Shown here in pieces: positions 11,531-23,741 of a stretch of 64,000 nt of DNA. The notes below the pieces were generated by a model. The model worked only from the letters and a program-made list of their open reading frames with translations. It did not search any database and was not told the origin of the DNA. The stretch's first letter is position 1. Every line of letters starts with the position of its first letter. A program made the position numbers and the translations under genes. Location of the stretch: the IMG/VR virus record IMGVR_UViG_3300044701_000569, positions 1-64,000 of that record. One strand, given 5' to 3'.

Positions 11531-11541
11531 CTCTGGGAGTG

Positions 11542-11613: not shown

Positions 11614-11718
11614 GCGGCGAGACCTCAGCTAGAACATGAAGTCTTTCAGCTGCGGCGAATGGTTGACATTTGGGTGCTGTCGTGTATAATAGAGACTTAG
11701 TTAGACAATTGAGGAGCC

Positions 11719-11880
11719 ATGATGCCTAAATTTTATTACACACAGACTGTGACATATACCTTACAGGTTGACGCAGACACAGCAGAAGCAGCAGACGAGA
11801 TTGCTGGAATGACCGATGTAAACTCTGCGGGAGTTAATGCCACCTACGAGGGCTGGGAAGAAGACGGTTACGCAGAATAA
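11719..11880 (+). CDS. Small acidic early protein (53 aa, not in ORF track)
   Basis: GAGGAG SD, own promoter; MMPKFYYTQTVTYTLQVDADTAEAADE...GYAE. Confidence 0.7.
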   Translation: MMPKFYYTQTVTYTLQVDADTAEAADEIAGMTDVNSAGVNATYEGWEEDGYAE

Positions 11881-11943
11881 TTTGGTTGACATTTGGGTGC
11901 TGTCGTGTATAATACTAGTATGTTCAACGGAGAGGGCACTAAA

Positions 11944-12186
11944 ATGGACTATGACATCGAGTTTATTAATACTACCGACTCAACTGTAGACTATAGCGAG
12001 CGAGCTATAGCAGAGTTCGAGAGGGGCATGGGGGATCGTATTGAGGTGTATACAGAGCAGTTCGAAAGCGACTGCGGGTTAGAACTGTGCGACGCAGACG
12101 ACATCGGCGGGCTCATTGTATACAGTGCAGAGGGAGCTCTGCGAGCAGTATACGACTATGAGAACTTCTGCGGGTGGCTCGTTTAA
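11944..12186 (+). CDS. Acidic early hypothetical protein
   Basis: Own promoter, GAGGGCA leader. Confidence 0.75.
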   Translation: MDYDIEFINTTDSTVDYSERAIAEFERGMGDRIEVYTEQFESDCGLELCDADDIGGLIVYSAEGALRAVYDYENFCGWLV

Positions 12187-12287
12187 ACGGGTGCAGAGGG
12201 GTGTGGCATAATAGCCACACTCTTTTTGGTTGACACGGTGCCAGAATCGTGTATAATAAGAACATAGGGCAACAGAAAGAGGGTGTT

Positions 12288-12545
12288 ATGGCAAAGACTT
12301 ATCGTTTCGTAGGGGTAAGCAACCTTAACGGTCGCTGGGCTGTTCGCTATGCCAACGAGCGGACTCGTGCGCGGGTTCTGCAGAAGAACGGGCATACGGA
12401 CGTGAAGCTGTGGGATTTGAAGGAAGCTCTGCGAGCAGAAGACCTCGTGGACGAGCTGCTCAACAAGGTTGGGCGTGGTGAGATTCTGGGCTCTGCTCGT
12501 GAAGCTGTCCTGGACGAAGCTCGCAGAATCGGCTTTGCGGTCTAA
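12288..12545 (+). CDS. Early hypothetical protein, paralog of 13475-13765
   Basis: Shared G.S.LNG....R(Y/F)AN....VL..NGHT.(V/I)KL pattern. Confidence 0.75.
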   Translation: MAKTYRFVGVSNLNGRWAVRYANERTRARVLQKNGHTDVKLWDLKEALRAEDLVDELLNKVGRGEILGSAREAVLDEARRIGFAV

Positions 12546-12616
12546 AAAAGAGGTTGACATTTGGGATCTTGGTGCTATACTAAGAGCATAGGGCAAACGA
12601 ACTGAGAGGGCAAACG

Positions 12617-13342
12617 ATGTTCAAACTGTTATCAACAGCGAATCCAAAAATCCAAAAAGGTACCAAGGAAGGCTATCTCAGCTTCATCCTGCACCTTGCT
12701 CCTGCTGATTTGAGCGGGCGTGAAGTCTGCGCCAAGCGGACCGCGGGTTGCACGGCAGCATGTCTCAACACCGCAGGGCGTGGTGGCATGTTCCGCAAGG
12801 GCGAGAACACCAACGTTATTCAAAAGGCACGTATTCGCAAGACCAAGTACTTCTTTGAGAATCGTGAAGCTTTCATGAGCGATCTTGTAGAAGACATCAT
12901 GCGAGCTGTGAACTATGCACGCCGCAAGGGCTTGACTCCCGTGTTTCGTTTGAATGGTACTAGTGACCTTGCTTGGGAGAAGTACCCAGTTCCCAACATG
13001 GGCAAGAACATCTTTGACACGTTCAGCACTCTTCAGTTCTACGACTACACCAAGATCCTGGGCCGTAAGACGAAGGATATTGACAATTACCACTTGACAT
13101 TCTCAGCCGCGGACGGTAACGACGCAGATGTTGAGCGGGCTGTGGCTCAGGGCATGAATGTCGCTGTGGTGTTTGATCGTCTGCCCGAGAATTATATGGG
13201 CAAGACTGTATTCAACGCAGACGATACGGATCTGCGCTTTTTGGATCCTAAGGGCGTGGTGCTTGGACTCAAAGCCAAGGGCCGTGCTAAGAAGGACACT
13301 TCGGGCTTCGTGCGCCGAGTGATTCCCCTGAGTGTTGCATAA
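12617..13342 (+). CDS. GP88-like phage protein (Cys-rich, CxxxxxxCxxxC)
   Basis: LHLAPA, CAKRTAGCTAACLNTAGRG, RLNGTSD, FYDYTK, NYHLTFS, DLRFLD, GLKAKG. Confidence 0.7.
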   Translation: MFKLLSTANPKIQKGTKEGYLSFILHLAPADLSGREVCAKRTAGCTAACLNTAGRGGMFRKGENTNVIQKARIRKTKYFFENREAFMSDLVEDIMRAVNYARRKGLTPVFRLNGTSDLAWEKYPVPNMGKNIFDTFSTLQFYDYTKILGRKTKDIDNYHLTFSAADGNDADVERAVAQGMNVAVVFDRLPENYMGKTVFNADDTDLRFLDPKGVVLGLKAKGRAKKDTSGFVRRVIPLSVA

Positions 13343-13474
13343 GTGCCACACTTTGGGGGTGGGCAATGGTGCCCAAAATATATGGTTGACACAATCCAAA
13401 AACCATGTATAATTTGAATATGAGCTGCGGGAACAGGTTCCAAAGCCATAAACTATGCACAAGGAGCATAAGAA

Positions 13475-13765
13475 ATGTCTAAGACGTTTACAATCGCTGG
13501 TACTTCCAGCCTCAATGGTAAGGTGAAGTTTCGTTTCGCTAACGGCACGATCAAGCATCGTGAGCAGGTGTTGACCCGCAACGGTCACACCGGGATCAAG
13601 CTCTATGAGCTGCCCTCTGCTATGGACAAGGACGCTGCTCGCTCCTTTGTCGAGAGCCAGGCTATCATGGCTCCCACTGTAACGGCTGAGGCTGTAGTGG
13701 CTGCAAAGCCCGCTCGAGCTCCAAAGGTCACAGTGCCTGCGGACGCAGAAGACGCTCTCATGTAA
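13475..13765 (+). CDS. Early hypothetical protein, paralog of 12288-12545
   Basis: AAGGAG SD; shared motifs. Confidence 0.75.
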   Translation: MSKTFTIAGTSSLNGKVKFRFANGTIKHREQVLTRNGHTGIKLYELPSAMDKDAARSFVESQAIMAPTVTAEAVVAAKPARAPKVTVPADAEDALM

Positions 13766-13885
13766 AGAGCAGTGGGGTGTGGCAGCAATGCCACACTCTT
13801 TTATAATGGCATCTTTTGGTTGACAATCTGCCCAAAGGTGCTATTATATAAGAGTGTTCAACAAACCATTGAGAGGGCAATCCAT

Positions 13886-14362
13886 ATGGAAACCGTTACA
13901 CTGCGGGGCGAAGACTTTCGTACAATCCACAACACGCTCTGCGAGCTGCGCGGCCTTGTAGAACGCATGACCCATTCGATCGTTAAGATCGATGACGTGC
14001 AGGACATCATCACCAAGTTCGAGTACGGGCTGAAGGACGCCTACGATCAGGACAGTTCAGCCTTTGATCGCAAGATGGACCACTACAGTGCTGTCAAAGA
14101 AGCAGAAAGCTTTCGCACAGTATGGAGCATCTTCACAGTGGAAGACCTGTACGAAGAGCATCCCTACAAGGACGCAGACACCATTGTCTACGAGAACCAC
14201 TGGGGCACCAGTCCCATCCGTGTAAGCTTCAAGGGCCGTCGTTGGGTAGATCTGTATGCTGCTGCGAACGCTGCGATCTGCACTTCGGGCGATGCTCATC
14301 ACATCTTTATCGAGCAGTTTACCCCCTTTGGGCGCGATCTAGTGCTGCAAACGGGCAGCTAA
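13886..14362 (+). CDS. Early hypothetical protein
   Basis: Promoter plus GAGGGCA leader; C-terminal GDAHHIFIEQF. Confidence 0.75.
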   Translation: METVTLRGEDFRTIHNTLCELRGLVERMTHSIVKIDDVQDIITKFEYGLKDAYDQDSSAFDRKMDHYSAVKEAESFRTVWSIFTVEDLYEEHPYKDADTIVYENHWGTSPIRVSFKGRRWVDLYAAANAAICTSGDAHHIFIEQFTPFGRDLVLQTGS

Positions 14363-14454
14363 GTCGTTGATCTAGAACAGGAATCTTTTTGGTTGACAAA
14401 TGGATTCCTGATGCTATAATAAGAACATAGGGTAAACAGAAAGAGGGTAATCAA

Positions 14455-14697
14455 ATGTCAAAAGTAGAACTTCGCAGCTTCGAAATCACTCCTGCAGAGC
14501 GTCGCCTCGCTGAGATCGGGCGCGGCATGATGGATGCTGCTGTGACCTGCAAGGACGATGCAGAGAGCAATCATCTTGCAGAGTGCGGTCACAAGCTCTG
14601 CGCTTTCAATGCGCCATATGGCACCACAATCAAGGACTTCACCGCTGAAGACAATGCGCTGATCCGTAAGTTCCTGGAGGGTGGTTATGCTTCTTAA
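14455..14697 (+). CDS. Early hypothetical protein
   Basis: Promoter plus AGGGTA leader. Confidence 0.75.
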   Translation: MSKVELRSFEITPAERRLAEIGRGMMDAAVTCKDDAESNHLAECGHKLCAFNAPYGTTIKDFTAEDNALIRKFLEGGYAS

Positions 14698-14899
14698 GTA
14701 TTGTGACTTCATCGCAGATCGTGTGCGAAAAGGACTCGTGAACTCGATGAACGACAGTCTAGAGCCTGTGCGTCTCAAGGACGTGGGCTCTGTAAAATGG
14801 GATTTGGGTCCGCAGGGTGAGTTTCGCTCAACCGCTAAGAGTCTTTTGGTTGAGGACGCCTACGGATCCAAATATAAGATCACGATTGAAGAAATTTAA
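14687..14899 (+). CDS. Early hypothetical protein
   Basis: GGAGG SD; overlaps the upstream stop. Confidence 0.6.
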   Translation: MLLKYCDFIADRVRKGLVNSMNDSLEPVRLKDVGSVKWDLGPQGEFRSTAKSLLVEDAYGSKYKITIEEI

Positions 14900-14998
14900 T
14901 CTTAGGGGTTGACAACCCCTAACTGTGGCCTTATAATAAGACATACTGAGGGAATAGGTATTCCCGAAGGTACTTCTACAATAAAAGGAAAAGGCATA

Positions 14999-15280
14999 AT
15001 GAAGCGATTTAATCCAGAAACCAAGACCTTCAAGGTCTTCAATGCACTCTACAACGGTGACAAGCTCACAGCGGCTCAGGCTGCAAAGCGTTTTGGCGTT
15101 GGCAATCTTGCTGCTGAAGCAAGCCGCATCCGCCAGTCAGGCTATGCTGTCTATGCTAACCAGCGTACCGCAGGCAACGGTGTAACCGTTACTGAGTATG
15201 AGATGGGTCAGCCCAGCCGCGAGATCGTTGCTCTCGGCTACAAGGCCAAGGCAGCAGGTCTTACCCTAGACACCATCTAA
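14999..15280 (+). CDS. Winged helix-turn-helix DNA-binding protein (putative)
   Basis: LTAAQAAKRFGVGNLAAEASRIRQSGYAVY followed by beta-hairpin-like YEMG. Confidence 0.65.
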   Translation: MKRFNPETKTFKVFNALYNGDKLTAAQAAKRFGVGNLAAEASRIRQSGYAVYANQRTAGNGVTVTEYEMGQPSREIVALGYKAKAAGLTLDTI

Positions 15281-15397
15281 GGTGCTCAAGAGTGTGGCAG
15301 AAATGCCACACTCTTATATAATAGCATCATTTATGGTTGACAAGCGCCTAGATGATGCTATTATATAAGAGTGTTCAACAAAGACAGAGGGCAAACA

Positions 15398-15688
15398 ATG
15401 TCAAATCGTGTTACAAGGGCAGTAGAACAGATCTACCAAATGGACGCCAACGAACTGAATCAAGTCGTTGAAGCAATCAAACTCAAACGCACCAGCCTAG
15501 CCCGTCAGGCTACTCGCTCCGTGATCATCGGCGATACTGTGAGCTTCGAAGCTCGCGGACGCATGGTTGTGGGCAAGGTCACCAAGGTGAACATCAAGAC
15601 GCTCACAGTTCGTGAAGACCGCAATGGTTCAGTCACCAACTGGAAGGTGTCCGCTACACTCGTCAACAAAGTAACCGTAGGAGCCTAA
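15398..15688 (+). CDS. Early hypothetical protein (SH3-like C-terminus)
   Basis: IGDTVSF...GKVTKVN.KT..V...WKV. Confidence 0.7.
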   Translation: MSNRVTRAVEQIYQMDANELNQVVEAIKLKRTSLARQATRSVIIGDTVSFEARGRMVVGKVTKVNIKTLTVREDRNGSVTNWKVSATLVNKVTVGA

Positions 15689-15689
15689 T

Positions 15690-16256
15690 ATGCCTAATTG
15701 GTGCAATAATTCCGTTACCATCACTCACACTGACACTGCCAAGATGCAGGCCCTTGTGGCCGCTGTCAACGAAGGCAAGTTCTGCGATCATGTGATTCCT
15801 ACTCCGCAGGATCTCACTGACACTGTGTCAGGATCCGTGCCTGAGGGGCCTGAGCGTGAAGCTCATGAAGCTCAGATGAAGCGTAACCTAGAGCTCTACG
15901 GAGCCAAGGACTGGTATGACTATCAGGTTTCCAACTGGGGGACCAAGTGGGATGTTCAGCCCTACGACACTGTTGAGCTGGAAGACGGCACTGTCTCCTT
16001 TGGCTTTGACAGTGCTTGGAGCCCGCCCATTGGAGTCTACACCATGCTGGTTGAACAAGGGTTCACTGTCAAGGCTTTCTACTACGAGCCAGGCATGTGC
16101 TTTGCTGGTGTATGGGAAGACGGCATTGATGAGTTCTACGAGCTGGACGGTATGTCTTCTGATGAAGTAGCCAACACGATCGATCGCGAGTTGGACGAGG
16201 TCATGGGCATCTCAGAGAGCATGGCTGAATACGAAGAAGAAAACATCGAAGAATAA
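15690..16256 (+). CDS. DUF1281/YubB ferredoxin-like domain protein
   Basis: MPNWCNN, WYDY...NWGTKWD, FDSAWSPP, YYEPG..FAG. Confidence 0.75.
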   Translation: MPNWCNNSVTITHTDTAKMQALVAAVNEGKFCDHVIPTPQDLTDTVSGSVPEGPEREAHEAQMKRNLELYGAKDWYDYQVSNWGTKWDVQPYDTVELEDGTVSFGFDSAWSPPIGVYTMLVEQGFTVKAFYYEPGMCFAGVWEDGIDEFYELDGMSSDEVANTIDRELDEVMGISESMAEYEEENIEE

Positions 16257-16314
16257 TGGTTGACAGCACCCTACGGGGTGCTATAATGAGCATATGAACA
16301 GCAAAGAGGGTATC

Positions 16315-16527
16315 ATGTCAAAAGAGATCTTGTTTGAAGACCTTGCAGAACAGCTGGCGCTGCTCAGCGACGAGGATCGTGCAGAGTTTGCTCAGTTCCT
16401 TGTAGAGAACTATCTACACGCCGCAGCGGGCTTGGCTACAGACATTGGACACGCTGAGATGGATCTAGAGTATTCTGCTCACGACACTTTTGAAGCGTAT
16501 CAAAGACGCGAGAACATATTCACATAA
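16315..16527 (+). CDS. Early acidic hypothetical protein
   Basis: Promoter plus GAGGGTA leader. Confidence 0.7.
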   Translation: MSKEILFEDLAEQLALLSDEDRAEFAQFLVENYLHAAAGLATDIGHAEMDLEYSAHDTFEAYQRRENIFT

Positions 16528-16544
16528 AGAGTAAATAACATCAC

Positions 16545-16621
16545 GCTCCTATAGCTCAATTGGTTAGAGCACCGGACTCATAATCCGTAGGTTCACAGTT
16601 CAAGTCTGTGTGGGAGCACCA
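16545..16621 (+). tRNA. tRNA with CAT anticodon, probably Ile2 (lysidine, reads AUA); elongator Met not excluded
   Basis: Acceptor GCTCCTA/TGGGAGC, anticodon loop CTCATAA, GTTCAA T-loop, encoded CCA; C4-G69 and C5-G68 pairs as in TilS substrates. Confidence 0.85.
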
Positions 16622-16624
16622 AAT

Positions 16625-16707
16625 GTCCGCGTGGTGGAATAGGTAGACACAAGAGACTTAAAATCTCTCGCTTAGGCGTGCCGGTTCGAGTCCGGCCGCG
16701 GATACCA
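16625..16707 (+). tRNA. tRNA-Leu(TAA)
   Basis: Acceptor GTCCGCG/CGCGGAT, AGAGA-CTTAAAA-TCTCT, long variable arm, CCA. Confidence 0.92.
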
Positions 16708-16785
16708 AGGCTAAGTATATGAACAAGACCAGTCAAGGTTATAAGAAGTATATACAAAAGATGAACTATCAACAGTTTATCAAAT

Positions 16786-16863
16786 CTGCCCGTAGCTCAG
16801 CAGGATTAGAGCAACAGCCTTCTAAGCTGTGGGTCGGGGGTTCGAATCCCTCCGGGCAGGCCA
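16786..16863 (+). tRNA. tRNA-Arg(TCT)
   Basis: Acceptor CTGCCCG/CGGGCAG, ACAGC-CTTCTAA-GCTGT, GGTTCGAATCC, CCA. Confidence 0.92.
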
Positions 16864-16890
16864 TTACCCCCAAAGCCAAACAGTAATACC

Positions 16891-17070
16891 ATGCCTCGCA
16901 TACCAACTAGTCGGATTCCTGACGACTGGGACTCCTACGACGATGATGAGCTAGATCTTAACCTAGAAGAGGAACGGGAGCGCAGAGAGCGCAAACGAAC
17001 CAAGCAAGACGCTGATGAGGACCAACAGCGCAGGGATTCGTGGCGCAAAAGCAACACCAAACGCAGCTAA
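16891..17070 (+). CDS. Small charged hypothetical protein (59 aa, not in ORF track)
   Basis: MPRIPTSRIPDDWDSYDDDE...NTKRS. Confidence 0.45.
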   Translation: MPRIPTSRIPDDWDSYDDDELDLNLEEERERRERKRTKQDADEDQQRRDSWRKSNTKRS

Positions 17071-17161
17071 GTCATTGATTCTAATAGAGAATCTTTTTGG
17101 TTGACAAGATCCCGTGTTCGTGTATAATAAGAACATAGGGCAAACAAACAAAGAGGGCAAT

Positions 17162-17440
17162 ATGATAGAACGCAAAGACTACACCGTAGAGGTTTACAAG
17201 GCAGACAAGCGCACCAAAGCAGGTGAGCGCCTTGTGCTCAAGCAGGATCACACAGACATCGATCTGCAGACACTGCGTCATCTTTATCTTACCACTTGGT
17301 TCAAGAACGACGGCTACCGCCATGAGTTCCACGAGACTTATGTAACCCGCACCAACATGATGGGTGGTAAGGAGTATCAGGAACGCTATGACACTCCTCG
17401 CTACTGCTCACCCAGCTCTGAAGCCTACTGGAGCATGTGA
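17162..17440 (+). CDS. Early hypothetical protein
   Basis: Promoter plus double AGGGCA leader; C-terminal TPRYCSPSSEAYWSM. Confidence 0.8.
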   Translation: MIERKDYTVEVYKADKRTKAGERLVLKQDHTDIDLQTLRHLYLTTWFKNDGYRHEFHETYVTRTNMMGGKEYQERYDTPRYCSPSSEAYWSM

Positions 17441-17441
17441 T

Positions 17442-17669: not shown

Positions 17670-17755
17670 CAGACCAAAAAAGTTTCAAAAAAGTGGTTGA
17701 CATTTGGGCGCACCCGTGTATAATAAGAACATAGGGCAAACAGAAAGGGCATACA

Positions 17756-17974
17756 ATGATCAAGCAAGTCGCAAAGGTAGCTGTAATTGGTACGCTGATG
17801 TTCAGCGGTACGCTGTTCGCAATGGACTACGCTTTCAGCATTCCAATTGTCAACAAGAGCTTCAGCACCAACCAATGCGTGTCTGTGGATAACTATCCGG
17901 GCTTAGTGTTTGGCAAGGCTGTATACTCCTGCGAGAACATGCCTGAGAAGTATGAGCTGAACTGGGTAAAATAA
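17756..17974 (+). CDS. Early membrane-anchored hypothetical protein
   Basis: Promoter plus leader; N-terminal hydrophobic helix. Confidence 0.7.
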   Translation: MIKQVAKVAVIGTLMFSGTLFAMDYAFSIPIVNKSFSTNQCVSVDNYPGLVFGKAVYSCENMPEKYELNWVK

Positions 17975-18042
17975 TGGTTGACAGCGCCTGCAGAGGTGCT
18001 ATACTAAGAACATAGGGCAAACAAACAGAGAGGGCAAAGCAA

Positions 18043-18510
18043 ATGGCAACACGAAGCACAATCGCAATGGAATTCGCAGACGGTACTGTCCAGCAGATCT
18101 ACTGCCACTGGGACGGCTACCTTTCCAATAACGGGCAGATCCTGCTCCAACACTATTCAGATCCTTTCAAAGTTCGTGAGTTGATCGACGGCGGCGCTGT
18201 TAGTTCGCTACGCCCTGAGATTGGCACCAAGCATGCGTTCAGCCAGTTTGAGGCTAAGGGCCAACCCTACGACGCAAAGCTCTACGAAGACATGACTACG
18301 TTTTACGCTCGCGATCGTGGCGAGGACTTGGTCAAAAACAAGTTCAAGGACTTTGCGGACTACCGCAAGAACGCACAGAGCGAGGAATACAATTATATCC
18401 TGCGCCGTGACGGCAATTGGTACGTGGAGTTCTACGGCGAGTTTGACGGCTTGCTGACTAAGGCTATTATGGACGAACAGGATCGCGAAGCACAAGAGGA
18501 GATAGCGTAA
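18043..18510 (+). CDS. Early phage protein with MATRS...IYCHWDGY motif
   Basis: Promoter plus double AGGGCA leader. Confidence 0.8.
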   Translation: MATRSTIAMEFADGTVQQIYCHWDGYLSNNGQILLQHYSDPFKVRELIDGGAVSSLRPEIGTKHAFSQFEAKGQPYDAKLYEDMTTFYARDRGEDLVKNKFKDFADYRKNAQSEEYNYILRRDGNWYVEFYGEFDGLLTKAIMDEQDREAQEEIA

Positions 18511-18683
18511 TGGCTATCTGTCCAGAGTGCATGGAAGAGAAGAGCATCCTTGCTAGTCGCTGTCCTCACTGCACTCAGGACATTGGTTATGGTAGACAGA
18601 TCCTTGCGATGTGTGTATACTACGGAGCAATCGTGTTGACTATGACATTTTTGGTTGTGCTGCTCAAGGCATGTAGTGGTTGA
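18510..18683 (+). CDS. Zinc-ribbon plus TM small protein (57 aa, not in ORF track)
   Basis: CPEC...CPHC then hydrophobic tail; stop TGA lies inside the next TTGACA. Confidence 0.65.
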   Translation: MAICPECMEEKSILASRCPHCTQDIGYGRQILAMCVYYGAIVLTMTFLVVLLKACSG

Positions 18684-18738
18684 CAGCAGAGCTAGATCGT
18701 GTATAATAGTGAAACATTCAACAGAAAGGGCAAAGGGC

Positions 18739-19761
18739 ATGAGTAAGACAATCCGTTTTATCGAAGGTACGTATAAGATTCGCGGCAACGACACTTCAGT
18801 TGCTGGATTGGTATTTCCTCTAGTAGAGGAATTCAAGGTAGGTACGGGCGGTGGCTACGTCACAGTGGATGGTAGTTCTGTGGCAGGCTTCCCGGATCGC
18901 AACATTAAGATCCGTTGCGAAGGTGCCGAGTCATACGAAACAGTGGACTCGAAGGTAGCCACCGCCCAGGCCAAGAGCCGTGTTGAGACTGATGAGCAGA
19001 TCATTGAACGACTGCGCGATCGTTTCAGCATGCTGGAGGAGATGACCAAAGCCTGTAAGAAGGGCGATGTGCGAGCTATGATCGTATCAGGTCCTCCGGG
19101 CGTTGGTAAGAGTCACGGTGTTGAGAAGGTGTTGGGCAAGCACGACCTGCTCGCTGACATCGCTAACGACTCAAAGTTCAAGAAGTACGAAGTGGTCAAG
19201 GGTGCTATGAGCGCCATTGGACTCTACTGCAAGCTGTTTCAGTATGCGGACAAGGATAACGTTATCGTGTTCGATGACTGCGATAGTGTGCTGTTGGACG
19301 ACCTCAGCTTGAACATTCTCAAGGCTGCTCTAGACTCTAAGAAGTCGCGTCGCATTCACTGGAACACCGACAGCTATAAACTGCGCAACGAAGGTGTGCC
19401 GGACAGCTTCGAGTTCAAGGGCTCAGCTATCTTTATCACCAACATCAAGTTCGATAACGTTAAGAGCAAGAAGCTCCGTGATCACCTTGAAGCTCTTGAG
19501 AGCCGTTGCCACTACATTGACCTGACCATTGATACAGAGCGTGAGAAGATGCTCCGCATCAAGCAGATCACTAAAGACGGCATGCTCTCTGAGTACGGCC
19601 TTAGTGAGGAAGTCCAAGACGAAATTGTGGACTTCATCGATCTTAACAAGAAGCGACTACGGGAACTGTCATTGCGTACAGTACTAAAGGTTGCCGATCT
19701 AGCCAAAGCATTCCCCTCTAAGTGGGAAGCTATGGCGGAGAATACTGTGATGAAGCGGTAA
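18739..19761 (+). CDS. AAA+ family ATPase
   Basis: Walker A GPPGVGKS, Walker B VIVFDDCD, sensor IFITN, ALESR arginine finger; leader AAAGGGCAAAGGGCATG. Confidence 0.85.
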   Translation: MSKTIRFIEGTYKIRGNDTSVAGLVFPLVEEFKVGTGGGYVTVDGSSVAGFPDRNIKIRCEGAESYETVDSKVATAQAKSRVETDEQIIERLRDRFSMLEEMTKACKKGDVRAMIVSGPPGVGKSHGVEKVLGKHDLLADIANDSKFKKYEVVKGAMSAIGLYCKLFQYADKDNVIVFDDCDSVLLDDLSLNILKAALDSKKSRRIHWNTDSYKLRNEGVPDSFEFKGSAIFITNIKFDNVKSKKLRDHLEALESRCHYIDLTIDTEREKMLRIKQITKDGMLSEYGLSEEVQDEIVDFIDLNKKRLRELSLRTVLKVADLAKAFPSKWEAMAENTVMKR

Positions 19762-19906
19762 GCCCTCCCGCTCACAGTACGGGCTCAGCAAGCCCTAGGA
19801 CATGCCCTCGTCCACCCGCTGAGCCCTAAAGAGCAGACAATCGTGTGCCCTCACGCTCTGCTCTTTGCGCCCGGACAGTGTGCCCTCGCTGTCCGGGTAT
19901 TTTTTT
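19743..19906 (+). ncRNA. Candidate four-hairpin structured RNA with GCCCU(C) loops, ending in an intrinsic terminator
   Basis: Stems 19743-19779, 19781-19826, 19828-19866, 19869-19898, each with a GCCCU-containing loop; T-run at 19900-19906. Confidence 0.7.
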
Positions 19907-19914
19907 CTCTGCAA

Positions 19915-19950
19915 AATCAATGACTTACAGCATAGGCTAAGTCATTGAAA
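19915..19950. promoter_or_regulatory. Inverted pair of IHF-like sites
   Basis: AATCAATGACTTA 19915-19927 and TAAGTCATTGAAA 19938-19950. Confidence 0.6.
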
Positions 19951-20040
19951 TCATTGAGGATTTTTTCTAAAAAAAGTGGTTGACATTTGGGCGCACCCGT
20001 GTATAATAAGAACATAGGGCAAACAAGAGGAGCAGCGTAC

Positions 20041-20232
20041 ATGGGCTACAGGATCATCAACGTTACACCAGAGTTCCGCGCACAATGGGAACCCAGAGTA
20101 GGTTTGGAAGGTCCGTTCTTCTACGAAGGCAACCGTGTGCTCTACTATGATGCCCGCGAAGGCAAGTACCTTAATCCCCAGACAGATATGTACCTCACCT
20201 ACGAAGAGTATGATGAGATCGCAAAGCAATAA
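20041..20232 (+). CDS. Early hypothetical protein
   Basis: GLEGPF...VLYYD.REGKY motif; own promoter. Confidence 0.75.
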   Translation: MGYRIINVTPEFRAQWEPRVGLEGPFFYEGNRVLYYDAREGKYLNPQTDMYLTYEEYDEIAKQ

Positions 20233-20301
20233 AAGTGGTTGACACGGATCCAAAACCGTGTATAATAAGAACATAGGGCAAACAAACAAGAGGGCAAACA
20301 A

Positions 20302-20637
20302 ATGGCAATGATCGTAATCCGCACCCAGTACATGGAAAACTATGGCGCCCACGATTGGGACGGCACTGGTGAGTGCCCGCAGTACTGGAAGTTCAAGGGC
20401 GGCTCGGAGTACAAGATCACCAACATCGACATCAACGGTGATCTGCAGGCTGCGGTGCGAGCTGCGGCTGTGGAACGCGACAACGACTACTGCCGCGAAT
20501 ACATCCTGGATTGGAGTGTGGAGGGGGACGACTACCTCAGCCAGTTCGAGCGTCAACAGCTGGAGTACGAGGGCAAGATTGACTGCCTTGAGCCCACTAT
20601 GGGCTATCGTGAGCTGCTGGAGACTCAGCCCGCATAA
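20302..20637 (+). CDS. Early hypothetical protein
   Basis: TQYMENYGAHDWDG.GECPQYWKFKGG; own promoter. Confidence 0.8.
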   Translation: MAMIVIRTQYMENYGAHDWDGTGECPQYWKFKGGSEYKITNIDINGDLQAAVRAAAVERDNDYCREYILDWSVEGDDYLSQFERQQLEYEGKIDCLEPTMGYRELLETQPA

Positions 20638-20709
20638 AAAGAATTGGTTGACAGGAACCCAAAATCCTGTATAATAAGAACATAGGGCAACAGAACAGAG
20701 GAGCACAGT

Positions 20710-21105
20710 ATGGATTGGGACAACATGATCAACACGCAAGAGGGATTGGCTCGCATGGTGGGCAAGACCTTTGTGAGCGTGAGCGGTGGCCGAGGCGACG
20801 GCGAGATGGAGTTCCGTACTGCTGACGGTGAGATCTTCCTGTTCAGCCACTACCAGGACTGCTGCGAATCCGTTAGTATCGAGGACGTCTGCGGTGACAT
20901 CCGGGACTTGGTGGGCGAGCCCATCCTCCTAGCTGAAGAAGTGTCGGGAGAAGCTCCTGCATCCGATGAGGATCACTGGGGCTCACAGACCTGGACCTTC
21001 TACAAGTTCGCTACCCGCAAGGGCTATGTGGACGTTCGCTGGCTGGGTGAATCCAACGGATATTACTCAGAGTCAGTGGATATGTACTATCAGGGTGTGG
21101 CATAA
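20710..21105 (+). CDS. Early hypothetical protein
   Basis: HYQDCCESV, WTFYKFATRKGYV.VRW.G.SNGYYSE. Confidence 0.8.
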   Translation: MDWDNMINTQEGLARMVGKTFVSVSGGRGDGEMEFRTADGEIFLFSHYQDCCESVSIEDVCGDIRDLVGEPILLAEEVSGEAPASDEDHWGSQTWTFYKFATRKGYVDVRWLGESNGYYSESVDMYYQGVA

Positions 21106-21183
21106 AAGCCACACCAAAAGTGGTTGACAGATTGGCACTAGGTGCTATACTAAGAACATAGGGCAAACAGAAAGGGCAATTAA

Positions 21184-21435
21184 ATGGACAAAGAACAGTT
21201 TGAACGTGATCCCCGGGACTATGCGCTGGACATGGTCAATGAGGGAATGGTCGATCCTATGCTGCTGCTCCAAGCAGCTCTGAATTGGATGAGCCACGAT
21301 GAGGTCCGCGAGATGTTGGACGCTAACGAACTCAGCCCGCGCTTCTCAGAGGATGAAGACGATGAGGATGAGGACGAAGAGTGGACTCCGGACAATGCAG
21401 ACTTCAACGATCCCGGCTCACGCCACCACTACTAA
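21184..21435 (+). CDS. Highly acidic early protein
   Basis: Own promoter; D/E tract. Confidence 0.75.
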   Translation: MDKEQFERDPRDYALDMVNEGMVDPMLLLQAALNWMSHDEVREMLDANELSPRFSEDEDDEDEDEEWTPDNADFNDPGSRHHY

Positions 21436-21441
21436 GGAGCG

Positions 21442-21669
21442 ATGATGATTAGAGAGCATATTCAAATGGAAACACGCCACGGCAGTCCTTATGATCGTGG
21501 TTCAGCAGACTCATACTACCGCAGGAAGCGCAGTCCTCACTACTATGTGGGCGACACTGGTACTTCAGAGCGTGTCACCCTCAAGGACATGACACCCGAT
21601 GAGGTCGAAGCCTATCACGCAGGCTACGATGACAACGAAGAAGCTGACAACCACAAGGAGTGGTTGTGA
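21442..21669 (+). CDS. Early hypothetical protein
   Basis: AAGGAG SD; RHGSPYDRGSADSYY motif. Confidence 0.75.
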   Translation: MMIREHIQMETRHGSPYDRGSADSYYRRKRSPHYYVGDTGTSERVTLKDMTPDEVEAYHAGYDDNEEADNHKEWL

Positions 21670-21773
21670 TGACTAGATTCGCAGAGTTCATCCTAGCTAC
21701 CTTTGCGGGTAGGATCGTACTGTTTGGAATGATTGTGGCCAGTCTTTGGACCTATCGTCTAATTTCTGGTTGA
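21669..21773 (+). CDS. Single-TM micro-protein (34 aa, not in ORF track)
   Basis: MTRFAEFILATFAGRIVLFGMIVASLWTYRLISG; stop inside the next TTGACA. Confidence 0.5.
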   Translation: MTRFAEFILATFAGRIVLFGMIVASLWTYRLISG

Positions 21774-21830
21774 CAAGAGTTCAAAAGGTGCTATACTAAG
21801 AACATAGGGCAAACACAAAGGGCAAACACC

Positions 21831-22157
21831 ATGCAAGACATTTTCAGCTTCATCGAAGACACCAATGACCAACTGCGCCGCTTGGTGCATGAAATGGAAT
21901 ACGTCCCTGCGGACAGCCTGGGCTTGGATCGTCGTGCCGCTTACCGCCTGTGGGTCAACGACGACTGCATCATCGTTGACAAGGGCAACGACCGCACCCT
22001 GCAGTACTACGGTGGGTTCGAGTATGTGGACAAGGAGTACCGCATTGAGATGGGTGACTATGTGATCTACCTCTCAGATGACGATCGTGTACAGGGACAC
22101 ATTGACACCCACTATCAGCGCGATGAAGAGGGTGTTTACACGGACGAAGACGCTTAA
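21831..22157 (+). CDS. Early acidic hypothetical protein
   Basis: Own promoter plus leader. Confidence 0.75.
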   Translation: MQDIFSFIEDTNDQLRRLVHEMEYVPADSLGLDRRAAYRLWVNDDCIIVDKGNDRTLQYYGGFEYVDKEYRIEMGDYVIYLSDDDRVQGHIDTHYQRDEEGVYTDEDA

Positions 22158-22169
22158 CCAAGGAACGAT

Positions 22170-22433
22170 ATGAATACAGTGATGATGACAATGGTGCGCC
22201 CCACGGTGCTGTTTGATGTGCTGAATCCACAGCACCGTGAGTGGGCCTATCAGTTCTTAGAACAGAAGAGCTGGCGTGACTGCCCAGTGATGTTCGCTCT
22301 CCCCCAAAGCGAGCCCTCGGTGTACACCATGATCACACGTGAGCTGAGCCACTATTACCTAAAGCAGGAGTTCCAACAGAAGCCCTGCCCTGTTGTAAAA
22401 ATACAACAGAAGTTTAAGGTAAAAAATGGTTGA
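22170..22433 (+). CDS. Hypothetical protein
   Basis: AAGGA SD; stop inside the next TTGACA. Confidence 0.65.
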   Translation: MNTVMMTMVRPTVLFDVLNPQHREWAYQFLEQKSWRDCPVMFALPQSEPSVYTMITRELSHYYLKQEFQQKPCPVVKIQQKFKVKNG

Positions 22434-22504
22434 CAGGGTTCCAAAATCCTGTATAATTAAGATGTAGGGCAAAAAAACTGTAACACGTAACACTAGGGGG
22501 CTAT

Positions 22505-22888
22505 ATGACAAAAGTAAATTATGACCGTTTCGCCAGCTTCGATCTCAACGAGTGCTGTGACTACTTTGACTCAGAGAAGCAGAGCAACTGGAAGAAGATC
22601 GGCAAGTTCATCGTAGCCGATGGACAGGAGTACGTAGAGGTCATGGAGCAAGAGTTTGACTTTGAGGACACTACAGACTCAGAGTACTCAGCATTTGAAG
22701 CGGGCGTCAAGTATGCGCTCACCAAGATGAACATTGCCCTGGAGGCCGCGGGCATAGACGTACAGGTCTGCGAAGTGGACCTCGTAGAGAGCATGGGCTT
22801 TATGATGGTGCGTTGCGATGACGAGCCCGAGGACTTTGTAAAGCGAGCTCTCAAGAAGCCCGTGCCCCAGGTAGAGAGCTGGGTCTAA
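22505..22888 (+). CDS. Early acidic hypothetical protein
   Basis: Own promoter. Confidence 0.75.
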   Translation: MTKVNYDRFASFDLNECCDYFDSEKQSNWKKIGKFIVADGQEYVEVMEQEFDFEDTTDSEYSAFEAGVKYALTKMNIALEAAGIDVQVCEVDLVESMGFMMVRCDDEPEDFVKRALKKPVPQVESWV

Positions 22889-22988
22889 GAGCCCGGGGTG
22901 TGGCATAAAAGCCACACCAAAAGTGGTTGACAGGAACCCAAAATCCTGTATAATAAGATACATAGGGCAAACACAAAGGGCAAAGCAA

Positions 22989-23261
22989 ATGAACATTTCC
23001 ACTCTTGAGCAGTACGTAGATCAGAAGAACCGCTGGGGCGCAATCTTTGGCTCCAAACCGTTGAGTCTGCTGAACAGCCAGGACCGCCAGGCTATCGCAG
23101 ACTCACTGGACTCAGACCTAAGCCCAGAGAATGTGAGCTGTGACGGAGAGATCCAAGGACGAGCTCTGATCCAGAAGCGCAACTATCTGATCCGTGCCGC
23201 ACGTGAACTCCACAGCATTGACCCTTCAGTTCGTATGTACGAAGCTGAGGGTTGGTTCTAA
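22989..23261 (+). CDS. Early hypothetical protein
   Basis: LSPENVSCDGE motif; own promoter. Confidence 0.75.
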   Translation: MNISTLEQYVDQKNRWGAIFGSKPLSLLNSQDRQAIADSLDSDLSPENVSCDGEIQGRALIQKRNYLIRAARELHSIDPSVRMYEAEGWF

Positions 23262-23339
23262 CTAGGGGTTGACACGAGTCCAAACTCGTGTATAATTAGA
23301 ACTGTAGGGCAAACAAACACACACGAAAGGGCAAACACT

Positions 23340-23669
23340 ATGATTACAGCACAGCAGATTGAGCAGGGCATCACGCTCGCACAGCAGGCTTCACAGCAGT
23401 TCTTCCAGCAGAAGCTGGGTGGACAGGACCAGTACGCCTGTGGCTTTGCTTGGGTAGATGTGTACGTGGATCGCACTAACTCTAAGCAGGCCAAGGAACT
23501 CTTAGCCGCAGGCTTCCGCAAGGACTACAAGCCCAAGTGCCTCTCAATGTGGAACCCAGGTGGCTTGGGTGTGCAGAACGTGGACACCAAAGAAGCGGGT
23601 GCGGACGCTATGGCACAGTACCTCAGAGCACTGGGCTTGAATGCCTACGCAGGCTCACGCTTAGATTAA
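23340..23669 (+). CDS. Early hypothetical protein
   Basis: ACGFAWV...Q....KEAGA.A.A..L...G..AY..SRLD. Confidence 0.8.
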   Translation: MITAQQIEQGITLAQQASQQFFQQKLGGQDQYACGFAWVDVYVDRTNSKQAKELLAAGFRKDYKPKCLSMWNPGGLGVQNVDTKEAGADAMAQYLRALGLNAYAGSRLD

Positions 23670-23710
23670 AAAAAGACGCACTCTCTGCAACACGCCTGAG
23701 AGTCCCTCTT

Positions 23711-23741
23711 CCCCGATCGGCAACGGTCGGGGTTTCTTTTT
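23711..23741 (+). terminator. Intrinsic terminator closing the early island
   Basis: CCCCGATCG-GCAA-CGGTCGGGG followed by TTTCTTTTT. Confidence 0.85.

What the first reader, a model, noticed from the sequence alone, without database searches (positions are those of the whole stretch)
11663..23340. Cassette-like array of 22 near-identical strong promoters with a stereotyped leader
Seen: nearly every one to three genes over 11.7 kb have their own GGTTGACA-N16-TATAAT/TATACT/TATTAT promoter, usually followed by AAGAACATAGGGCAAAC(A-rich)AGGGCA-ATG. A second leader type, ATAAGAGTGTTCAAC, occurs at 13848 and 15365. Some units are exact duplicates: 56 bp 17687-17742 = 19970-20025; 38 bp from 21093 = from 22896; about 31 bp from 11661 = from 11884. 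Three genes use the TGA inside TTGACA as their stop (ending 18683, 21773, 22433). Sigma70-like promoters elsewhere (near 8475, 10204, 35453, 45109) have 17-bp spacers, so the 16-bp spacer is island-specific. Inference: this is a host-takeover region that could also act as an RNA-polymerase sink, and the repeats may let gene cassettes be gained, lost or shuffled by recombination.
Basis: partly seen in the sequence, partly recalled or inferred. Interest (0 to 1): 0.75.

Follow-up and report, generated by a model that had tools for sequence, protein, structure and literature searches.

The report
Early-promoter cassette array in jumbo phage
This is the early-gene region of an uncultured freshwater jumbo phage, where 22 near-consensus host-type promoters each drive one to three tiny genes; it is a large, dense example of the "PeSL" promoter/stem-loop cassettes already described in T4-like phages, so it is a good specimen but not a new kind of thing.

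Summary
Window 11663-23296 carries 22 co-oriented sigma70-type promoters: 16 are perfect TTGACA/TATAAT, 21 have a 16-bp spacer and one has 17 bp. They serve about 30 small ORFs and three tRNAs. Most have a short A-rich leader (ATAGGGCAAAC ... AGGGCA-ATG). The exact repeats of 56, 38 and 32 bp are real.

The window is the first 64 kb of a 357.6-kb IMG/VR jumbo phage from freshwater. Its nearest cultured relative is Pseudomonas phage PA5oct. I found no phage RNA polymerase, sigma factor or integrase.

The units match published PeSLs (promoter-early stem-loops; Arbiol 2010, Comeau 2014). They have an A/T-rich upstream flank, a consensus promoter, and stem-loops upstream of or inside the spacer, followed by an SD and a small ORFan.

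Relatives carry the same arrays with orthologous cassettes in scrambled order. In one related pair, homology blocks end at promoters far more often than chance.

- Island codon usage differs sharply (GC3 0.62 vs 0.28), and four relatives show the same contrast.
- The island tRNAs read codons that the island avoids.
- The AGGGCA start-site motif is island-specific.

The 16-bp spacer is not island-specific. The RNA-polymerase-sink idea is untested. Verdict: new member of a known kind.

The parts
11663..11690 (+). Promoter 1 (TTGACA-N16-TATAAT), drives the 53-aa ORF 11719-11880. Its leader is atypical.
11886..11913 (+). Promoter 2. The 32-bp stretch 11883-11914 is an exact copy of 11660-11691 at promoter 1. 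Drives the 80-aa ORF 11944-12186. GTTCAAC-type leader.
12199..12221 (+). Stem-loop GGGTGTGGCA-N4-GCCACACT followed by CTTTTT, terminator-like, just upstream of promoter 3. First member of a 5-copy stem-loop family.
12230..12257 (+). Promoter 3 with the standard leader. Drives the 85-aa ORF 12288-12545, a paralogue of 13475-13765.
12554..12581 (+). Promoter 4 (TGC-TATACT), standard leader. Drives the GP88-family gene 12617-13342 (PF17338). The whole cassette including its promoter is homologous to L014 11546-12312.
13358..13375 (+). Stem-loop GGTGGGCA-N4-TGCCCA upstream of promoter 5.
13386..13413 (+). Promoter 5, with a long 55-nt structured leader. Drives the 96-aa ORF 13475-13765.
13775..13797 (+). 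Stem-loop of the GTGTGGCA family followed by CTTTTATAAT, terminator-like.
13820..13847 (+). Promoter 6 (TGC-TATTAT) with the second leader type ATAAGAGTGTTCAAC. Drives the 158-aa ORF 13886-14362.
14393..14420 (+). Promoter 7. Drives ORFs 14455-14697 and 14687-14899.
14909..14937 (+). Promoter 8, the only one with a 17-bp spacer. Drives the 93-aa winged-helix protein 14999-15280 (PF14090).
15290..15312 (+). Stem-loop of the GTGTGGCA family. Its 3' flank is one arm of a 26-nt inverted repeat (15308-15333 / 15349-15374) that brackets the -35 of promoter 9.
15337..15364 (+). Promoter 9 (TATTAT), second leader type. Drives ORFs 15398-15688 and 15690-16256.
16260..16287 (+). Promoter 10. A 7-bp inverted repeat fills its spacer. 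Drives the 70-aa ORF 16315-16527 and the three tRNAs.
16545..16863 (+). tRNA-Met(CAT) 16545-16621, tRNA-Leu(TAA) 16625-16707 and tRNA-Arg(TCT) 16786-16863. PA5oct lists the same three consecutively. The Met-Leu pair (16549-16697) also gives DNA matches in most relatives' loci compared.
17077..17093 (+). Stem-loop GATTCT-N5-AGAATC followed by TTTTT, terminator-like, ending the tRNA unit.
17101..17128 (+). Promoter 11, standard leader. Drives ORFs 17162-17440 and 17388-17669 (DUF6552).
17697..17724 (+). Promoter 12, inside the 56-bp exact repeat 17687-17742. Drives the 72-aa ORF 17756-17974. In run X9 the stretch 17767-17971 (nearly the whole ORF) is replaced by a diverged stretch of the same length.
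17978..18005 (+). Promoter 13. Drives ORFs 18043-18510 and 18510-18683. Homology to L014 starts at 17972.
18680..18707 (+). Promoter 14. Its TGA is the stop codon of the upstream ORF. Drives the 340-aa AAA-type ATPase 18739-19761 (phrog_1250), which is related to a gene labelled nrdC.10 in T4-like Aeromonas phage 25.
19869..19897 (+). Strong intrinsic terminator (12-bp stem followed by a T-run) after the ATPase gene.
19980..20007 (+). Promoter 15, inside the second copy of the 56-bp exact repeat (19970-20025). Drives the 63-aa ORF 20041-20232.
20239..20266 (+). Promoter 16, with a 6-bp inverted repeat in the spacer. Drives the 111-aa ORF 20302-20637.
20648..20675 (+). Promoter 17, with a spacer inverted repeat. 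The 35-bp stretch 20645-20679 is an exact copy of 22924-22958. Drives the DUF7448 gene 20710-21105.
21093..21115 (+). Stem-loop of the GTGTGGCA family with no T-run after it. It lies in the 38-bp exact repeat 21093-21130.
21124..21151 (+). Promoter 18. Drives ORFs 21184-21435, 21442-21669 and 21666-21773.
21770..21797 (+). Promoter 19. Its TGA is the stop codon of the upstream ORF. Drives ORFs 21831-22157 and 22170-22433; this gene pair stays adjacent in L013-L015.
22430..22457 (+). Promoter 20. Its TGA is the stop codon of the upstream ORF. Drives the 127-aa ORF 22505-22888.
22896..22918 (+). Stem-loop of the GTGTGGCA family, in the second copy of the 38-bp exact repeat (22896-22933).
22927..22954 (+). 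Promoter 21. Drives the 90-aa ORF 22989-23261.
23269..23296 (+). Promoter 22, the last. An 8-bp inverted repeat fills its spacer. Drives the 109-aa ORF 23340-23669.
23711..23732 (+). Strong intrinsic terminator (9-bp stem, 7 GC pairs, T-run) that closes the array.

Best explanation
The region is the immediate-early, host-RNA-polymerase-read gene block of an uncultured freshwater jumbo myovirus of 357.6 kb, distantly related to PA5oct within the T4 superfamily. It is built as an array of PeSL-type regulatory cassettes.

Each unit consists of, in order:
- an A/T-rich flank that often holds the stop codon of the upstream gene;
- a near-perfect sigma70 promoter (GGTTGACA, 16-bp spacer, TG-preceded TATAAT/TATACT/TATTAT);
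- in many units a stem-loop, either upstream of the -35 or filling the spacer, that attenuates read-through from the unit before;
- a short, A-rich, weakly structured leader of about 29 nt;
- one to three small ORFs, or the three tRNAs.

Shown: the anatomy, its statistical excess, its presence in many related phage contigs, and scrambled cassette order among relatives with homology breakpoints concentrated at promoters.

Inferred:
(1) Unmodified host sigma70 holoenzyme fires all units at once on DNA entry, giving a burst of many small proteins.
(2) The island is written in GC3-rich codons (presumed host-like, though the host is unknown) so that it can be translated before the phage tRNAs accumulate. 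It also delivers early the tRNAs for TTA, AGA and perhaps ATA, codons that the AT-rich remainder of the genome uses heavily.
(3) The 32-56-bp identical promoter/leader stretches serve as patches for the phage's own homologous recombination system (a UvsX-like recombinase is encoded at 52456-53547). Whole expression-ready cassettes are therefore gained, lost, duplicated and reordered without disturbing their neighbours.

The confidence of 0.78 refers to the identity of the region as an early PeSL-type cassette array. My confidence in an active role of the repeats in cassette exchange is about 0.55.
For: Promoters.

Phage identity: a 357,559-bp virus record. Terminase is 55% identical to PA5oct. 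UvsX-like recombinase, helicases and primase are present. No RNAP beta or sigma70_r2 hit. The PA5oct paper reports host-RNAP dependence, TTGAC/TATAATA promoters and early expression of small uncharacterised genes.

PeSL definition from the papers: A/T-rich flank, consensus sigma70 promoter, and a stem-loop upstream of, overlapping or between the boxes, followed by SD and ATG of an ORFan, in hyperplastic regions. RB49 itself shows TTGACA-GGGGATC...GATCCCC-TATAAT, i.e. a stem-loop inside the spacer.

Stem-loops here:
- Five GTGTGGCA-family copies plus four other stem-loops or terminators lie upstream of promoters.
- Spacer inverted repeats of 5 bp or more occur in 22% of island promoters against 2.6% in shuffled spacers.
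- Repeats of 6 bp or more occur in 5.4% against 0.7% of 333 distinct clade promoters.

Genes: almost all ORFans, but conserved in relatives at 30-85% amino-acid identity, so they are real genes.

Clade-wide arrays: L014/15, L016, L045, L056, L060/61 and L009 carry them, clustered in one island per long contig.

Shuffling:
- Cassette order is scrambled and co-oriented.
- Window-to-L014 homology blocks begin at promoters (12544, 17972) or at start codons.
- L060/L061 breakpoints are enriched at promoters, p about 4e-5.
- A relative clade with sparse, non-stereotyped promoters is collinear at similar divergence.
- Run X9 carries a replaced allele of ORF 17756-17974 between conserved promoter flanks.

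Codon usage: GC3 is 0.617 in the island against 0.279 elsewhere. TTA is 3% vs 31% of Leu codons, AGA 3% vs 48% of Arg, ATA 5% vs 33% of Ile. Four relatives show the same contrast.

Leaders: mean 29 nt, 44% A and 11% T, mean MFE -2.5 against -4.6 kcal/mol for shuffles.
Against: - No transcription start site or timing data exist for this phage. The one RNA run gave only a few low-depth contigs.
- The host is unknown, so 'host-like codons' is an inference.
- No deletion junction or circle between island repeats was observed. Nearly all 'joints' proved to be paralogous units from elsewhere in the island.
- Only about 8 of 22 units have an upstream stem-loop, and only about 5-8 have a spacer stem-loop. 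Two GTGTGGCA hairpins lack a T-run.
- In the close pair L014/L015 the two breakpoints are not at promoters.
- Breakpoints near promoters are also breakpoints at gene boundaries. Selection against gene-disrupting events could therefore produce part of the enrichment.
- The nearest cultured relative, PA5oct, has no such dense array.
Confidence: 0.78

Rival explanations
1. The likeness of the promoters is only convergence. Each early gene is independently selected for the strongest possible sigma70 promoter and an efficient leader. The repeats have no role in recombination, and rearrangements arise from illegitimate or gene-boundary-limited events.
For: The conserved parts are exactly the functional consensus elements, while the spacers vary (56% mean identity). 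In L014/L015 the breakpoints are not at promoters. Enrichment of breakpoints at promoters is confounded with intergenic position.
Against: Exact identity over 56, 38, 35 and 32 bp extends through non-consensus spacer and flank positions. Each genome has its own leader 'dialect'. The one L014 cassette written in the window's dialect (GP88) is also the one most similar to the window in protein, 85%. This argues for descent, conversion or transfer of whole units, not convergence. Published PeSL work demonstrated crossovers inside such units.
Confidence: 0.25
2. The island is a recently acquired foreign module, which would explain its higher GC. It came from a GC-richer phage or mobile element and is not an integral early region.
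For: GC is about 50% against 36-40% in the rest of the window. GC3 is 0.62 against 0.28. The island has its own start-site motif.
Against: The same contrast (array GC3 0.44-0.52, rest 0.22-0.37) occurs in four independent relatives whose arrays sit in one island beside the conserved ATPase. The ATPase is a widespread gene of T4-like phages. The tRNA trio matches PA5oct. No integrase is present. The composition is therefore an old, maintained property of the region.
Confidence: 0.08
3. The shared 5' leader (ATAGGGCAAAC at the transcript start plus AGGGCA at the ribosome site) is a recognition code for an unidentified factor: a phage or host RNA-binding protein, nuclease or small RNA. That factor would switch the whole early class on or off after transcription, in the way T4 RegA and RegB act on early mRNAs. 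This would add to the main explanation, not replace it.
For: AGGGCAAAC has 15 + strand copies and all are in the island. AGGGCA lies upstream of 55% of island starts against 1-2% elsewhere. Related motifs (AAGGCA, TAGGCA, AGAGGGCA) occur at the same two positions in many relatives. The motif is a poor match to a canonical SD (inspection of the sequence).
Against: No RegA or RegB homologue was detected, though the controls were uninformative. No complementary GTTTGCCCT cluster suggests a small RNA; there are only 3 scattered copies. GAGG/AGGG can still pair with the anti-SD. An A-rich unstructured leader alone explains good translation.
Confidence: 0.2
4. The array works mainly as a decoy or sink that titrates host RNA polymerase away from host promoters.
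For: There are 22 consensus promoters in 11.7 kb. From general knowledge, strong T5 and T7 early promoters outcompete host promoters.
Against: Nothing here tests it. Each promoter is followed by a conserved, translatable gene with homologues in relatives, so expression of the products is the simpler purpose. One genome copy carries 22 sites, against thousands of polymerase molecules per cell (general knowledge).
Confidence: 0.1
5. It is an integron-like system in which a site-specific recombinase moves cassettes between attachment sites.
For: Cassette-like layout with repeated boundary elements that contain inverted repeats.
Against: No tyrosine recombinase exists anywhere in the 357-kb genome, with a positive control in 14 of 14 genomes. 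Every cassette has its own promoter, unlike integron cassettes. The boundary stem-loops vary in sequence and position.
Confidence: 0.02

Closest known systems
PeSLs (promoter-early stem-loops) of T4-like phages RB49/phi1, PST/T4 and nt-1/KVP40 (Arbiol et al. 2010, PMC2839356; Comeau et al. 2014, PMC4122927)
   Same: [quoted passage not shown] The units cluster in a variable region, are co-oriented, and mark breakpoints between relatives. RB49 promoters such as TTGACA-GGGGATCGGTGATCCCC-TATAAT parallel the window's TTGACA-CGAGTCCAAACTCG-TGTATAAT.
   Different: The host phage is a 357-kb PA5oct-like jumbo phage from freshwater, not a member of the Straboviridae. The array is much denser: 22 in 11.7 kb, whereas by eye the RB49 matches cluster at about 4 within 8-9 kb. 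The spacer is 16 bp instead of 17. The stem-loops are not polyG/polyC. A long stereotyped leader with a non-canonical AGGGCA start-site motif is present. The island differs sharply from the rest of the genome in codon usage. Mini-circles were not tested here.
Early region of Pseudomonas jumbo phage PA5oct (Lood et al. 2020, PMC7318152)
   Same: Nearest cultured relative by terminase (55%) and ATPase (45%). Dependent on host RNAP. TTGAC/TATAATA promoters. Early expression of many small uncharacterised genes. tRNA Met(CAT), Leu(TAA) and Arg(TCT) are listed consecutively.
   Different: PA5oct has only 16 TTGAC-N17-19-TATAAT sites, scattered over 287 kb. There is no dense array near its ATPase homologue.
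T4 early promoters; T5 pre-early and early promoters; the SPO1 host-takeover module (general knowledge, not tested here)
   Same: Clusters of very strong promoters read by host sigma factor in front of small early genes that redirect the host. SPO1 packs 24 genes into 12 short early operons.
   Different: Those arrays are not reported to share a long stereotyped leader or an island-specific codon usage. No sequence homology to them was found here.
Integron gene-cassette arrays
   Same: Tandem, co-oriented, exchangeable single-gene cassettes bounded by repeats that contain inverted repeats.
   Different: No integrase and no attC. Each cassette carries its own promoter. Exchange is most likely by general homologous recombination.

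Membership tests
PeSL (promoter-early stem-loop) cassettes | Near-consensus sigma70-type early promoter in the intergenic space | tested here: met
   22 sites with 11-12 of 12 matches, all on the + strand.
PeSL (promoter-early stem-loop) cassettes | A/T-rich tract upstream of the -35 that often holds the upstream stop codon | tested here: met
   Most flanks are A/T runs before GG-TTGACA, for example CTCTTTTT, AAAAAAGT and AAAATAAT. Three stop codons lie inside TTGACA itself.
PeSL (promoter-early stem-loop) cassettes | Stem-loop associated with the promoter (upstream of -35, overlapping a box, or between the boxes) | tested here: inconclusive
   Present in about half of the units. Five GTGTGGCA-family stem-loops and four others or terminators lie upstream. 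Spacer inverted repeats of 5 bp or more occur in 22% against 2.6% in shuffles. The remaining units show no clear stem-loop. Terminator activity is untested.
PeSL (promoter-early stem-loop) cassettes | SD and start codon of a small, mostly ORFan gene directly downstream | tested here: met
   Leaders are about 29 nt. ORFs are 35-340 aa and nearly all lack a known function.
PeSL (promoter-early stem-loop) cassettes | Located in a hyperplastic region: gene content and order vary between relatives, with breakpoints at the elements | tested here: met
   Cassette order is scrambled against L013-L016, L045 and L060/61. L060/L061 block ends are enriched at promoters, p about 4e-5. No relative above 90% identity was available for the window itself.
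PeSL (promoter-early stem-loop) cassettes | Recombination between neighbouring elements yields deletions or mini-circles | not testable with these tools
   Only assembled contigs could be laid. Apparent joints were paralogue artefacts. Inverse PCR or long reads are needed.
PeSL (promoter-early stem-loop) cassettes | Carried by a T4-type myovirus | tested here: inconclusive
   The large terminase, UvsX-like recombinase and nrdC.10-like ATPase match T4-like phages. The phage clusters with PA5oct-like jumbo phages (Arenbergviridae), not with Straboviridae.
Integron | IntI tyrosine recombinase next to the array | tested here: not met
   No PF00589 hit in the whole genome; the control was positive in 14 of 14 genomes.
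Integron | Promoterless cassettes expressed from one common promoter, each ending in attC | tested here: not met
   Each unit has its own promoter. There is no conserved attC-like site at every boundary.

The most novel reading that the evidence does not exclude
The array may be more than a passive set of strong promoters. On this reading it is a clade-wide, compositionally separate pool of 'plug-and-play' early cassettes shared among uncultured freshwater and marine jumbo phages. The stereotyped 5' leader (ATAGGGCAAAC ... AGGGCA) would be a dedicated post-transcriptional code read by an unknown factor. The flanking elements (the DnaA-box cluster and the TCAATGACTTA motif) would couple early transcription to host DnaA or to replication initiation. 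Cassette exchange would then be an evolved, integrase-free analogue of an integron.
Probability: 0.12. Interest if true: 0.65.

Novelty: new member of a known kind. Interest (0 to 1): 0.35.

Why it matters
It extends PeSL-type mobile regulatory cassettes from cultured T4-like coliphages and vibriophages to a large clade of uncultured aquatic jumbo phages. It offers an unusually clean and dense natural example: 22 units, with exact repeats up to 56 bp.

The sharp split in codon usage between the early island and the rest of the genome, seen again in four relatives, is a tidy natural case for an existing idea. On that idea, early genes are tuned to the untouched host translation system, while later genes rely on phage tRNAs. 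The early-expressed tRNAs for the codons the island avoids fit the same picture.

Practically, the island is a catalogue of about 30 candidate host-takeover or anti-defence proteins, and of strong, compact promoter/leader parts. None of this overturns current understanding.

Tried and rejected
- Near-identical relatives in cultured-phage records: megablast of the island gave only tRNA-Arg hits. Breakpoints could therefore not be mapped for the window itself. The best relatives share 60-86% amino-acid identity.
- Deletion or circle junctions in public runs. The joints 17709>17995, 19992>17995 and 22917>20236, and several loose ends, match other island units (P12554, P12230, P14393, P17101) and are paralogue artefacts. 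Other joints have sides under 30 nt or come from high-depth foreign contigs. Only the X9 allele replacement at 17767-17971 is robust (151-nt side).
- The RNA run X18 gave eight short, low-depth contigs. This is no evidence on transcription start sites.
- T4-style regulators AsiA, RegB and RegA: no hits, but the control genomes were also silent, so this is uninformative.
- Functional annotation of the ORFs. Pfam and PHROGs gave only GP88, DUF7448, DUF6552, a winged helix and an AAA ATPase; the PHROG families hit have no assigned function apart from a marginal clamp-loader match (E 8e-4) to the ATPase.
- Rfam: only the three tRNAs.
- A small RNA complementary to the leader: only three scattered GTTTGCCCT copies.
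- Idea that spacer hairpins substitute for missing upstream terminators: the two features are not complementary in distribution, so the idea was dropped.
- PA5oct as a model for the array: it has none.

Full report
**1. The observation**

A pattern search for TTGACA-N15-18-TANNNT finds 33 sites in the window against 4.5 expected; 0 of 100 shuffles reach 33. Twenty-two sites lie on the + strand between 11663 and 23296. An independent consensus scan of 10000-29500 lists 16 sites with 12/12 matches and 6 with 11/12. All are on the + strand and all lie inside that interval, with no comparable + strand site afterwards. Twenty-one spacers are 16 bp; the one at 14909 is 17 bp.

- 56 bp, 17687-17742 = 19970-20025;
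- 38 bp, 21093-21130 = 22896-22933;
- 32 bp, 11660-11691 = 11883-11914;
- and a further 35 bp, 20645-20679 = 22924-22958.

The second leader type follows the promoters at 13820 and 15337. Three ORFs do stop in the TGA of TTGACA.

Two statements need correcting. First, the units share only 56% mean identity over -12..+50, so they are stereotyped in their functional blocks and not near-identical. Second, the 16-bp spacer is not peculiar to the island. Of 78 other promoters in the genome with at most one mismatch, 28 have N16 and 29 have N17.

**2. What genome this is**

The window is bases 1-64000 of a 357,559-bp IMG/VR virus record rated complete. It encodes a large terminase, a tail tube protein, a DnaB-like helicase, a primase and a UvsX-like recombinase. 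The terminase is 55% identical to that of Pseudomonas jumbo phage PA5oct, followed by Atu_ph07 and other giant T4-superfamily phages.

No RNA polymerase beta-type domain, no sigma70 region 2 and no tyrosine integrase were found; the control genomes were positive. The phage, at 95-100% identity, occurs in many freshwater and lake metagenomes. PA5oct is reported to depend on host RNA polymerase, to have 32 TTGAC/TATAATA promoters, and to express blocks of small uncharacterised genes early.

**3. Anatomy of a unit**

Upstream of GG-TTGACA lies an A/T-rich run, often containing the previous stop codon.

Five units are preceded by a conserved stem-loop, GGGTGTGGCA-N4-GCCACAC. Three of these have a T-rich tail and two do not. 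Other stem-loops or strong terminators lie at 13358, 17077, 19869 and 23711; the last closes the array.

Several spacers are themselves inverted repeats that use the ACA of the -35 and the TGT before ATAAT, for example TTGACA-CGAGTCCAAACTCG-TGTATAAT. Stems of 5 bp or more occur in 22% of island promoters against 2.6% of shuffled spacers. Stems of 6 bp or more occur in 5.4% against 0.7% of 333 distinct promoters from the clade, with different stem sequences.

Assuming a start 7 nt after the -10, the leaders average 29 nt, 44% A and 11% T. They fold less than shuffles, -2.5 against -4.6 kcal/mol. About 15 leaders begin ATAGGGCAAAC and end in AGGGCA or GAGGGCA a few bases before the ATG.

AGGGCAAAC has 15 + strand copies in the genome, all in the island. 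AGGGCA precedes 55% of island starts against 1-2% elsewhere, where AGGAG and AAGGA are usual.

**4. Gene content**

About 30 ORFs of 35-340 aa are present. Named families are limited to:
- GP88 (PF17338), at 12617-13342;
- a winged helix (PF14090), at 14999-15280;
- DUF6552, at 17388-17669;
- DUF7448, at 20710-21105;
- an AAA-type ATPase, at 18739-19761.

The ATPase's homologues include a gene labelled nrdC.10 in T4-like Aeromonas phage 25. One paralogous pair exists, 12288-12545 and 13475-13765. Most ORFs have homologues at 30-85% identity in related contigs, so they are real genes. tRNA-Met(CAT), tRNA-Leu(TAA) and tRNA-Arg(TCT) sit in the unit driven by the promoter at 16260. PA5oct lists the same three consecutively.

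**5. Codon usage**

Island GC3 is 0.617 against 0.279 for long ORFs elsewhere. The island almost avoids several codons that the rest of the genome uses heavily:

| Codon | Island | Rest of genome |
|---|---|---|
| TTA (of Leu) | 3% | 31% |
| AGA (of Arg) | 3% | 48% |
| ATA (of Ile) | 5% | 33% |
| AAA (of Lys) | 17% | 61% |

The island tRNAs read TTA and AGA. If the CAT tRNA is of the Ile2 type (not tested), it reads ATA.

The same contrast appears in four relatives: array loci have GC3 0.44-0.52, other parts 0.22-0.37. This argues against a one-off foreign insertion and for a maintained property.

My reading is an inference. Early genes are tuned to the untouched cell, and the tRNAs needed by the AT-rich later genes are delivered early. 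That phage tRNAs mainly serve late genes is an existing idea (for example).

**6. Relatives**

The ATPase has 191 relatives in IMG/VR. Upstream of nearly all of them lies GGTTGAC-N16-18-TATAMT, a leader with an (A/T)AGGCA-like word, and AGAGGGCA before the ATG.

Several contigs carry arrays as dense as the window's: L014/15, L016, L045, L056 and L060/61. Each uses its own leader wording. In long contigs the promoters cluster in one island around the ATPase. PA5oct has no such array.

Orthologous cassettes appear in different orders but always co-oriented. At DNA level, window-to-L014 blocks start at promoters (12544, 17972) or at start codons. Seven shared blocks keep only one adjacency.

The single L014 unit written in the window's leader wording is the GP88 cassette. 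It is also the cassette most similar to the window in protein, 85%. This suggests transfer of a whole promoter-leader-gene unit.

Between L060 and L061 (about 81% identity), 13 of 31 and 14 of 31 homology-block ends fall within -40..+70 of a promoter. That window covers 13-14% of the sequence, giving p about 4e-5. A sister clade (L065-L088) with sparse, unstereotyped promoters is collinear at similar divergence. The close pair L014/L015 has two breakpoints that are not at promoters.

**7. Population data**

Contigs from four runs break at every promoter, as expected for repeats. In run X9 the stretch 17767-17971, nearly the whole of ORF 17756-17974, is replaced by a diverged stretch of equal length. 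The replacement lies between the conserved start of that ORF (with its leader upstream) and the next promoter, with a 151-nt flanking match. The remaining joints are paralogue artefacts or too short to trust. No deletion or circle was seen, but contigs cannot show rare forms.

**8. Comparison with what is known**

The published PeSLs of T4-like phages are defined as an A/T-rich flank, a consensus sigma70 promoter, and a stem-loop that may lie upstream of, overlapping or between the boxes. These are followed by the SD and ATG of an ORFan. PeSLs concentrate in hyperplastic regions, and crossovers have been mapped between the -10 and the ATG or in the stem-loop. They also form mini-circles.

RB49 itself shows TTGACA-GGGGATC...GATCCCC-TATAAT. 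The island meets these criteria except that stem-loops are evident in only about half of the units, recombination products were not observable, and the carrier is a PA5oct-like jumbo phage and not a member of the Straboviridae.

By the same pattern RB49 has 29 sites in 164 kb. By eye, its densest stretch holds about 4 within 8-9 kb, against 22 in 11.7 kb here.

An integron-like system is excluded: there is no integrase, and each cassette has its own promoter. The RNA-polymerase-sink idea remains untested.

**9. Verdict**

This is a real, statistically overwhelming feature. It is best explained as the immediate-early PeSL-type cassette array of an uncultured freshwater jumbo phage.

It is a new member of a known kind. 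Three additions are worth recording: the conserved codon-usage split, the island-specific AGGGCA leader, and the clade-wide distribution.

Confidence is about 0.8 for the identity of the region and about 0.55 for an active role of the repeats in cassette exchange.

Noticed in passing
window 11426-11530: Five perfect DnaA boxes (TGTGGATAA) and one TTATGCACA lie within 105 bp, about 130 bp upstream of the first island promoter. The whole 357-kb genome has only 9 perfect boxes. Similar clusters sit next to the arrays of relatives: L013-L015 have 7 plus 3, L059 has 6 plus 2, and L009/L010 and L050 have 3 each. This could be a replication origin, a DnaA-titrating site or a DnaA-controlled promoter region.
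   Followed up: partly
window 10200-11660: A non-coding stretch of about 1.4 kb lies between the leftward promoter at 10204 and the island. It holds several repeat families: TAGGCCCCGCTGCT three to four times (10588-10790), a 21-nt direct repeat at about 10994-11040, and TACCAAAGTAAATTT twice (11335-11372). PA5oct has a long non-coding region with an annotated lncRNA at the corresponding place upstream of its ATPase homologue.
   Followed up: partly
window 11603, 14360, 17068, 17658, 19917-19948: The motif TCAATGACTTA occurs in both orientations, 35-60 nt upstream of five island promoters. All five exact copies in the genome are in the island, and at 19917-19948 two copies form a palindrome. 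The same word (TTAAGTCATTGATTT) lies upstream of the ATPase promoter in distant contigs L065-L084. Its function is unknown; it is possibly a protein-binding site.
   Followed up: partly
window 15308-15374 and 13800-13860: A 26-nt inverted repeat (96% complementary) brackets the -35 of the promoter at 15337; a weaker version brackets the promoter at 13820. The 'second leader type' ATAAGAGTGT is the complement of the flank ACACTCTTAT next to the upstream stem-loop. In read-through RNA this would form a long duplex, a possible RNase III-type processing site. On the minus strand it mirrors a -10 box.
   Followed up: no
G000:C1:274000-340000 (outside the window), minus strand: A second promoter-rich zone holds about 28 near-consensus promoters between 280 and 340 kb. 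It contains 24 further tRNA genes at 282-292 kb. Its leaders carry TAGGCA-type words instead of AGGGCA.
   Followed up: partly
G000:C1:289168-289239 (outside the window): ARAGORN reports a tRNA-like gene with a four-base anticodon call (tgat) and no assigned amino acid, inside the tRNA cluster.
   Followed up: no
window 17600-17767 in run X9: In one lake population the promoter at 17697 carries a different spacer (several substitutions and small indels at 17710-17737), and an 11-bp deletion lies upstream at 17675. The downstream gene is a diverged allele. So promoter 'dialect' and gene allele vary together within the natural population.
   Followed up: partly
L048 and L060/L061 (related contigs): Some relatives have long stem-loops that engulf promoter boxes. 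One example is L048, GGTTGAC-GGCAGGGCctcGCCCTGC-TATACT. Another is L060, where ACAGGGCAGC ... GCTGCCCTGT has the -35 in its loop.
   Followed up: no
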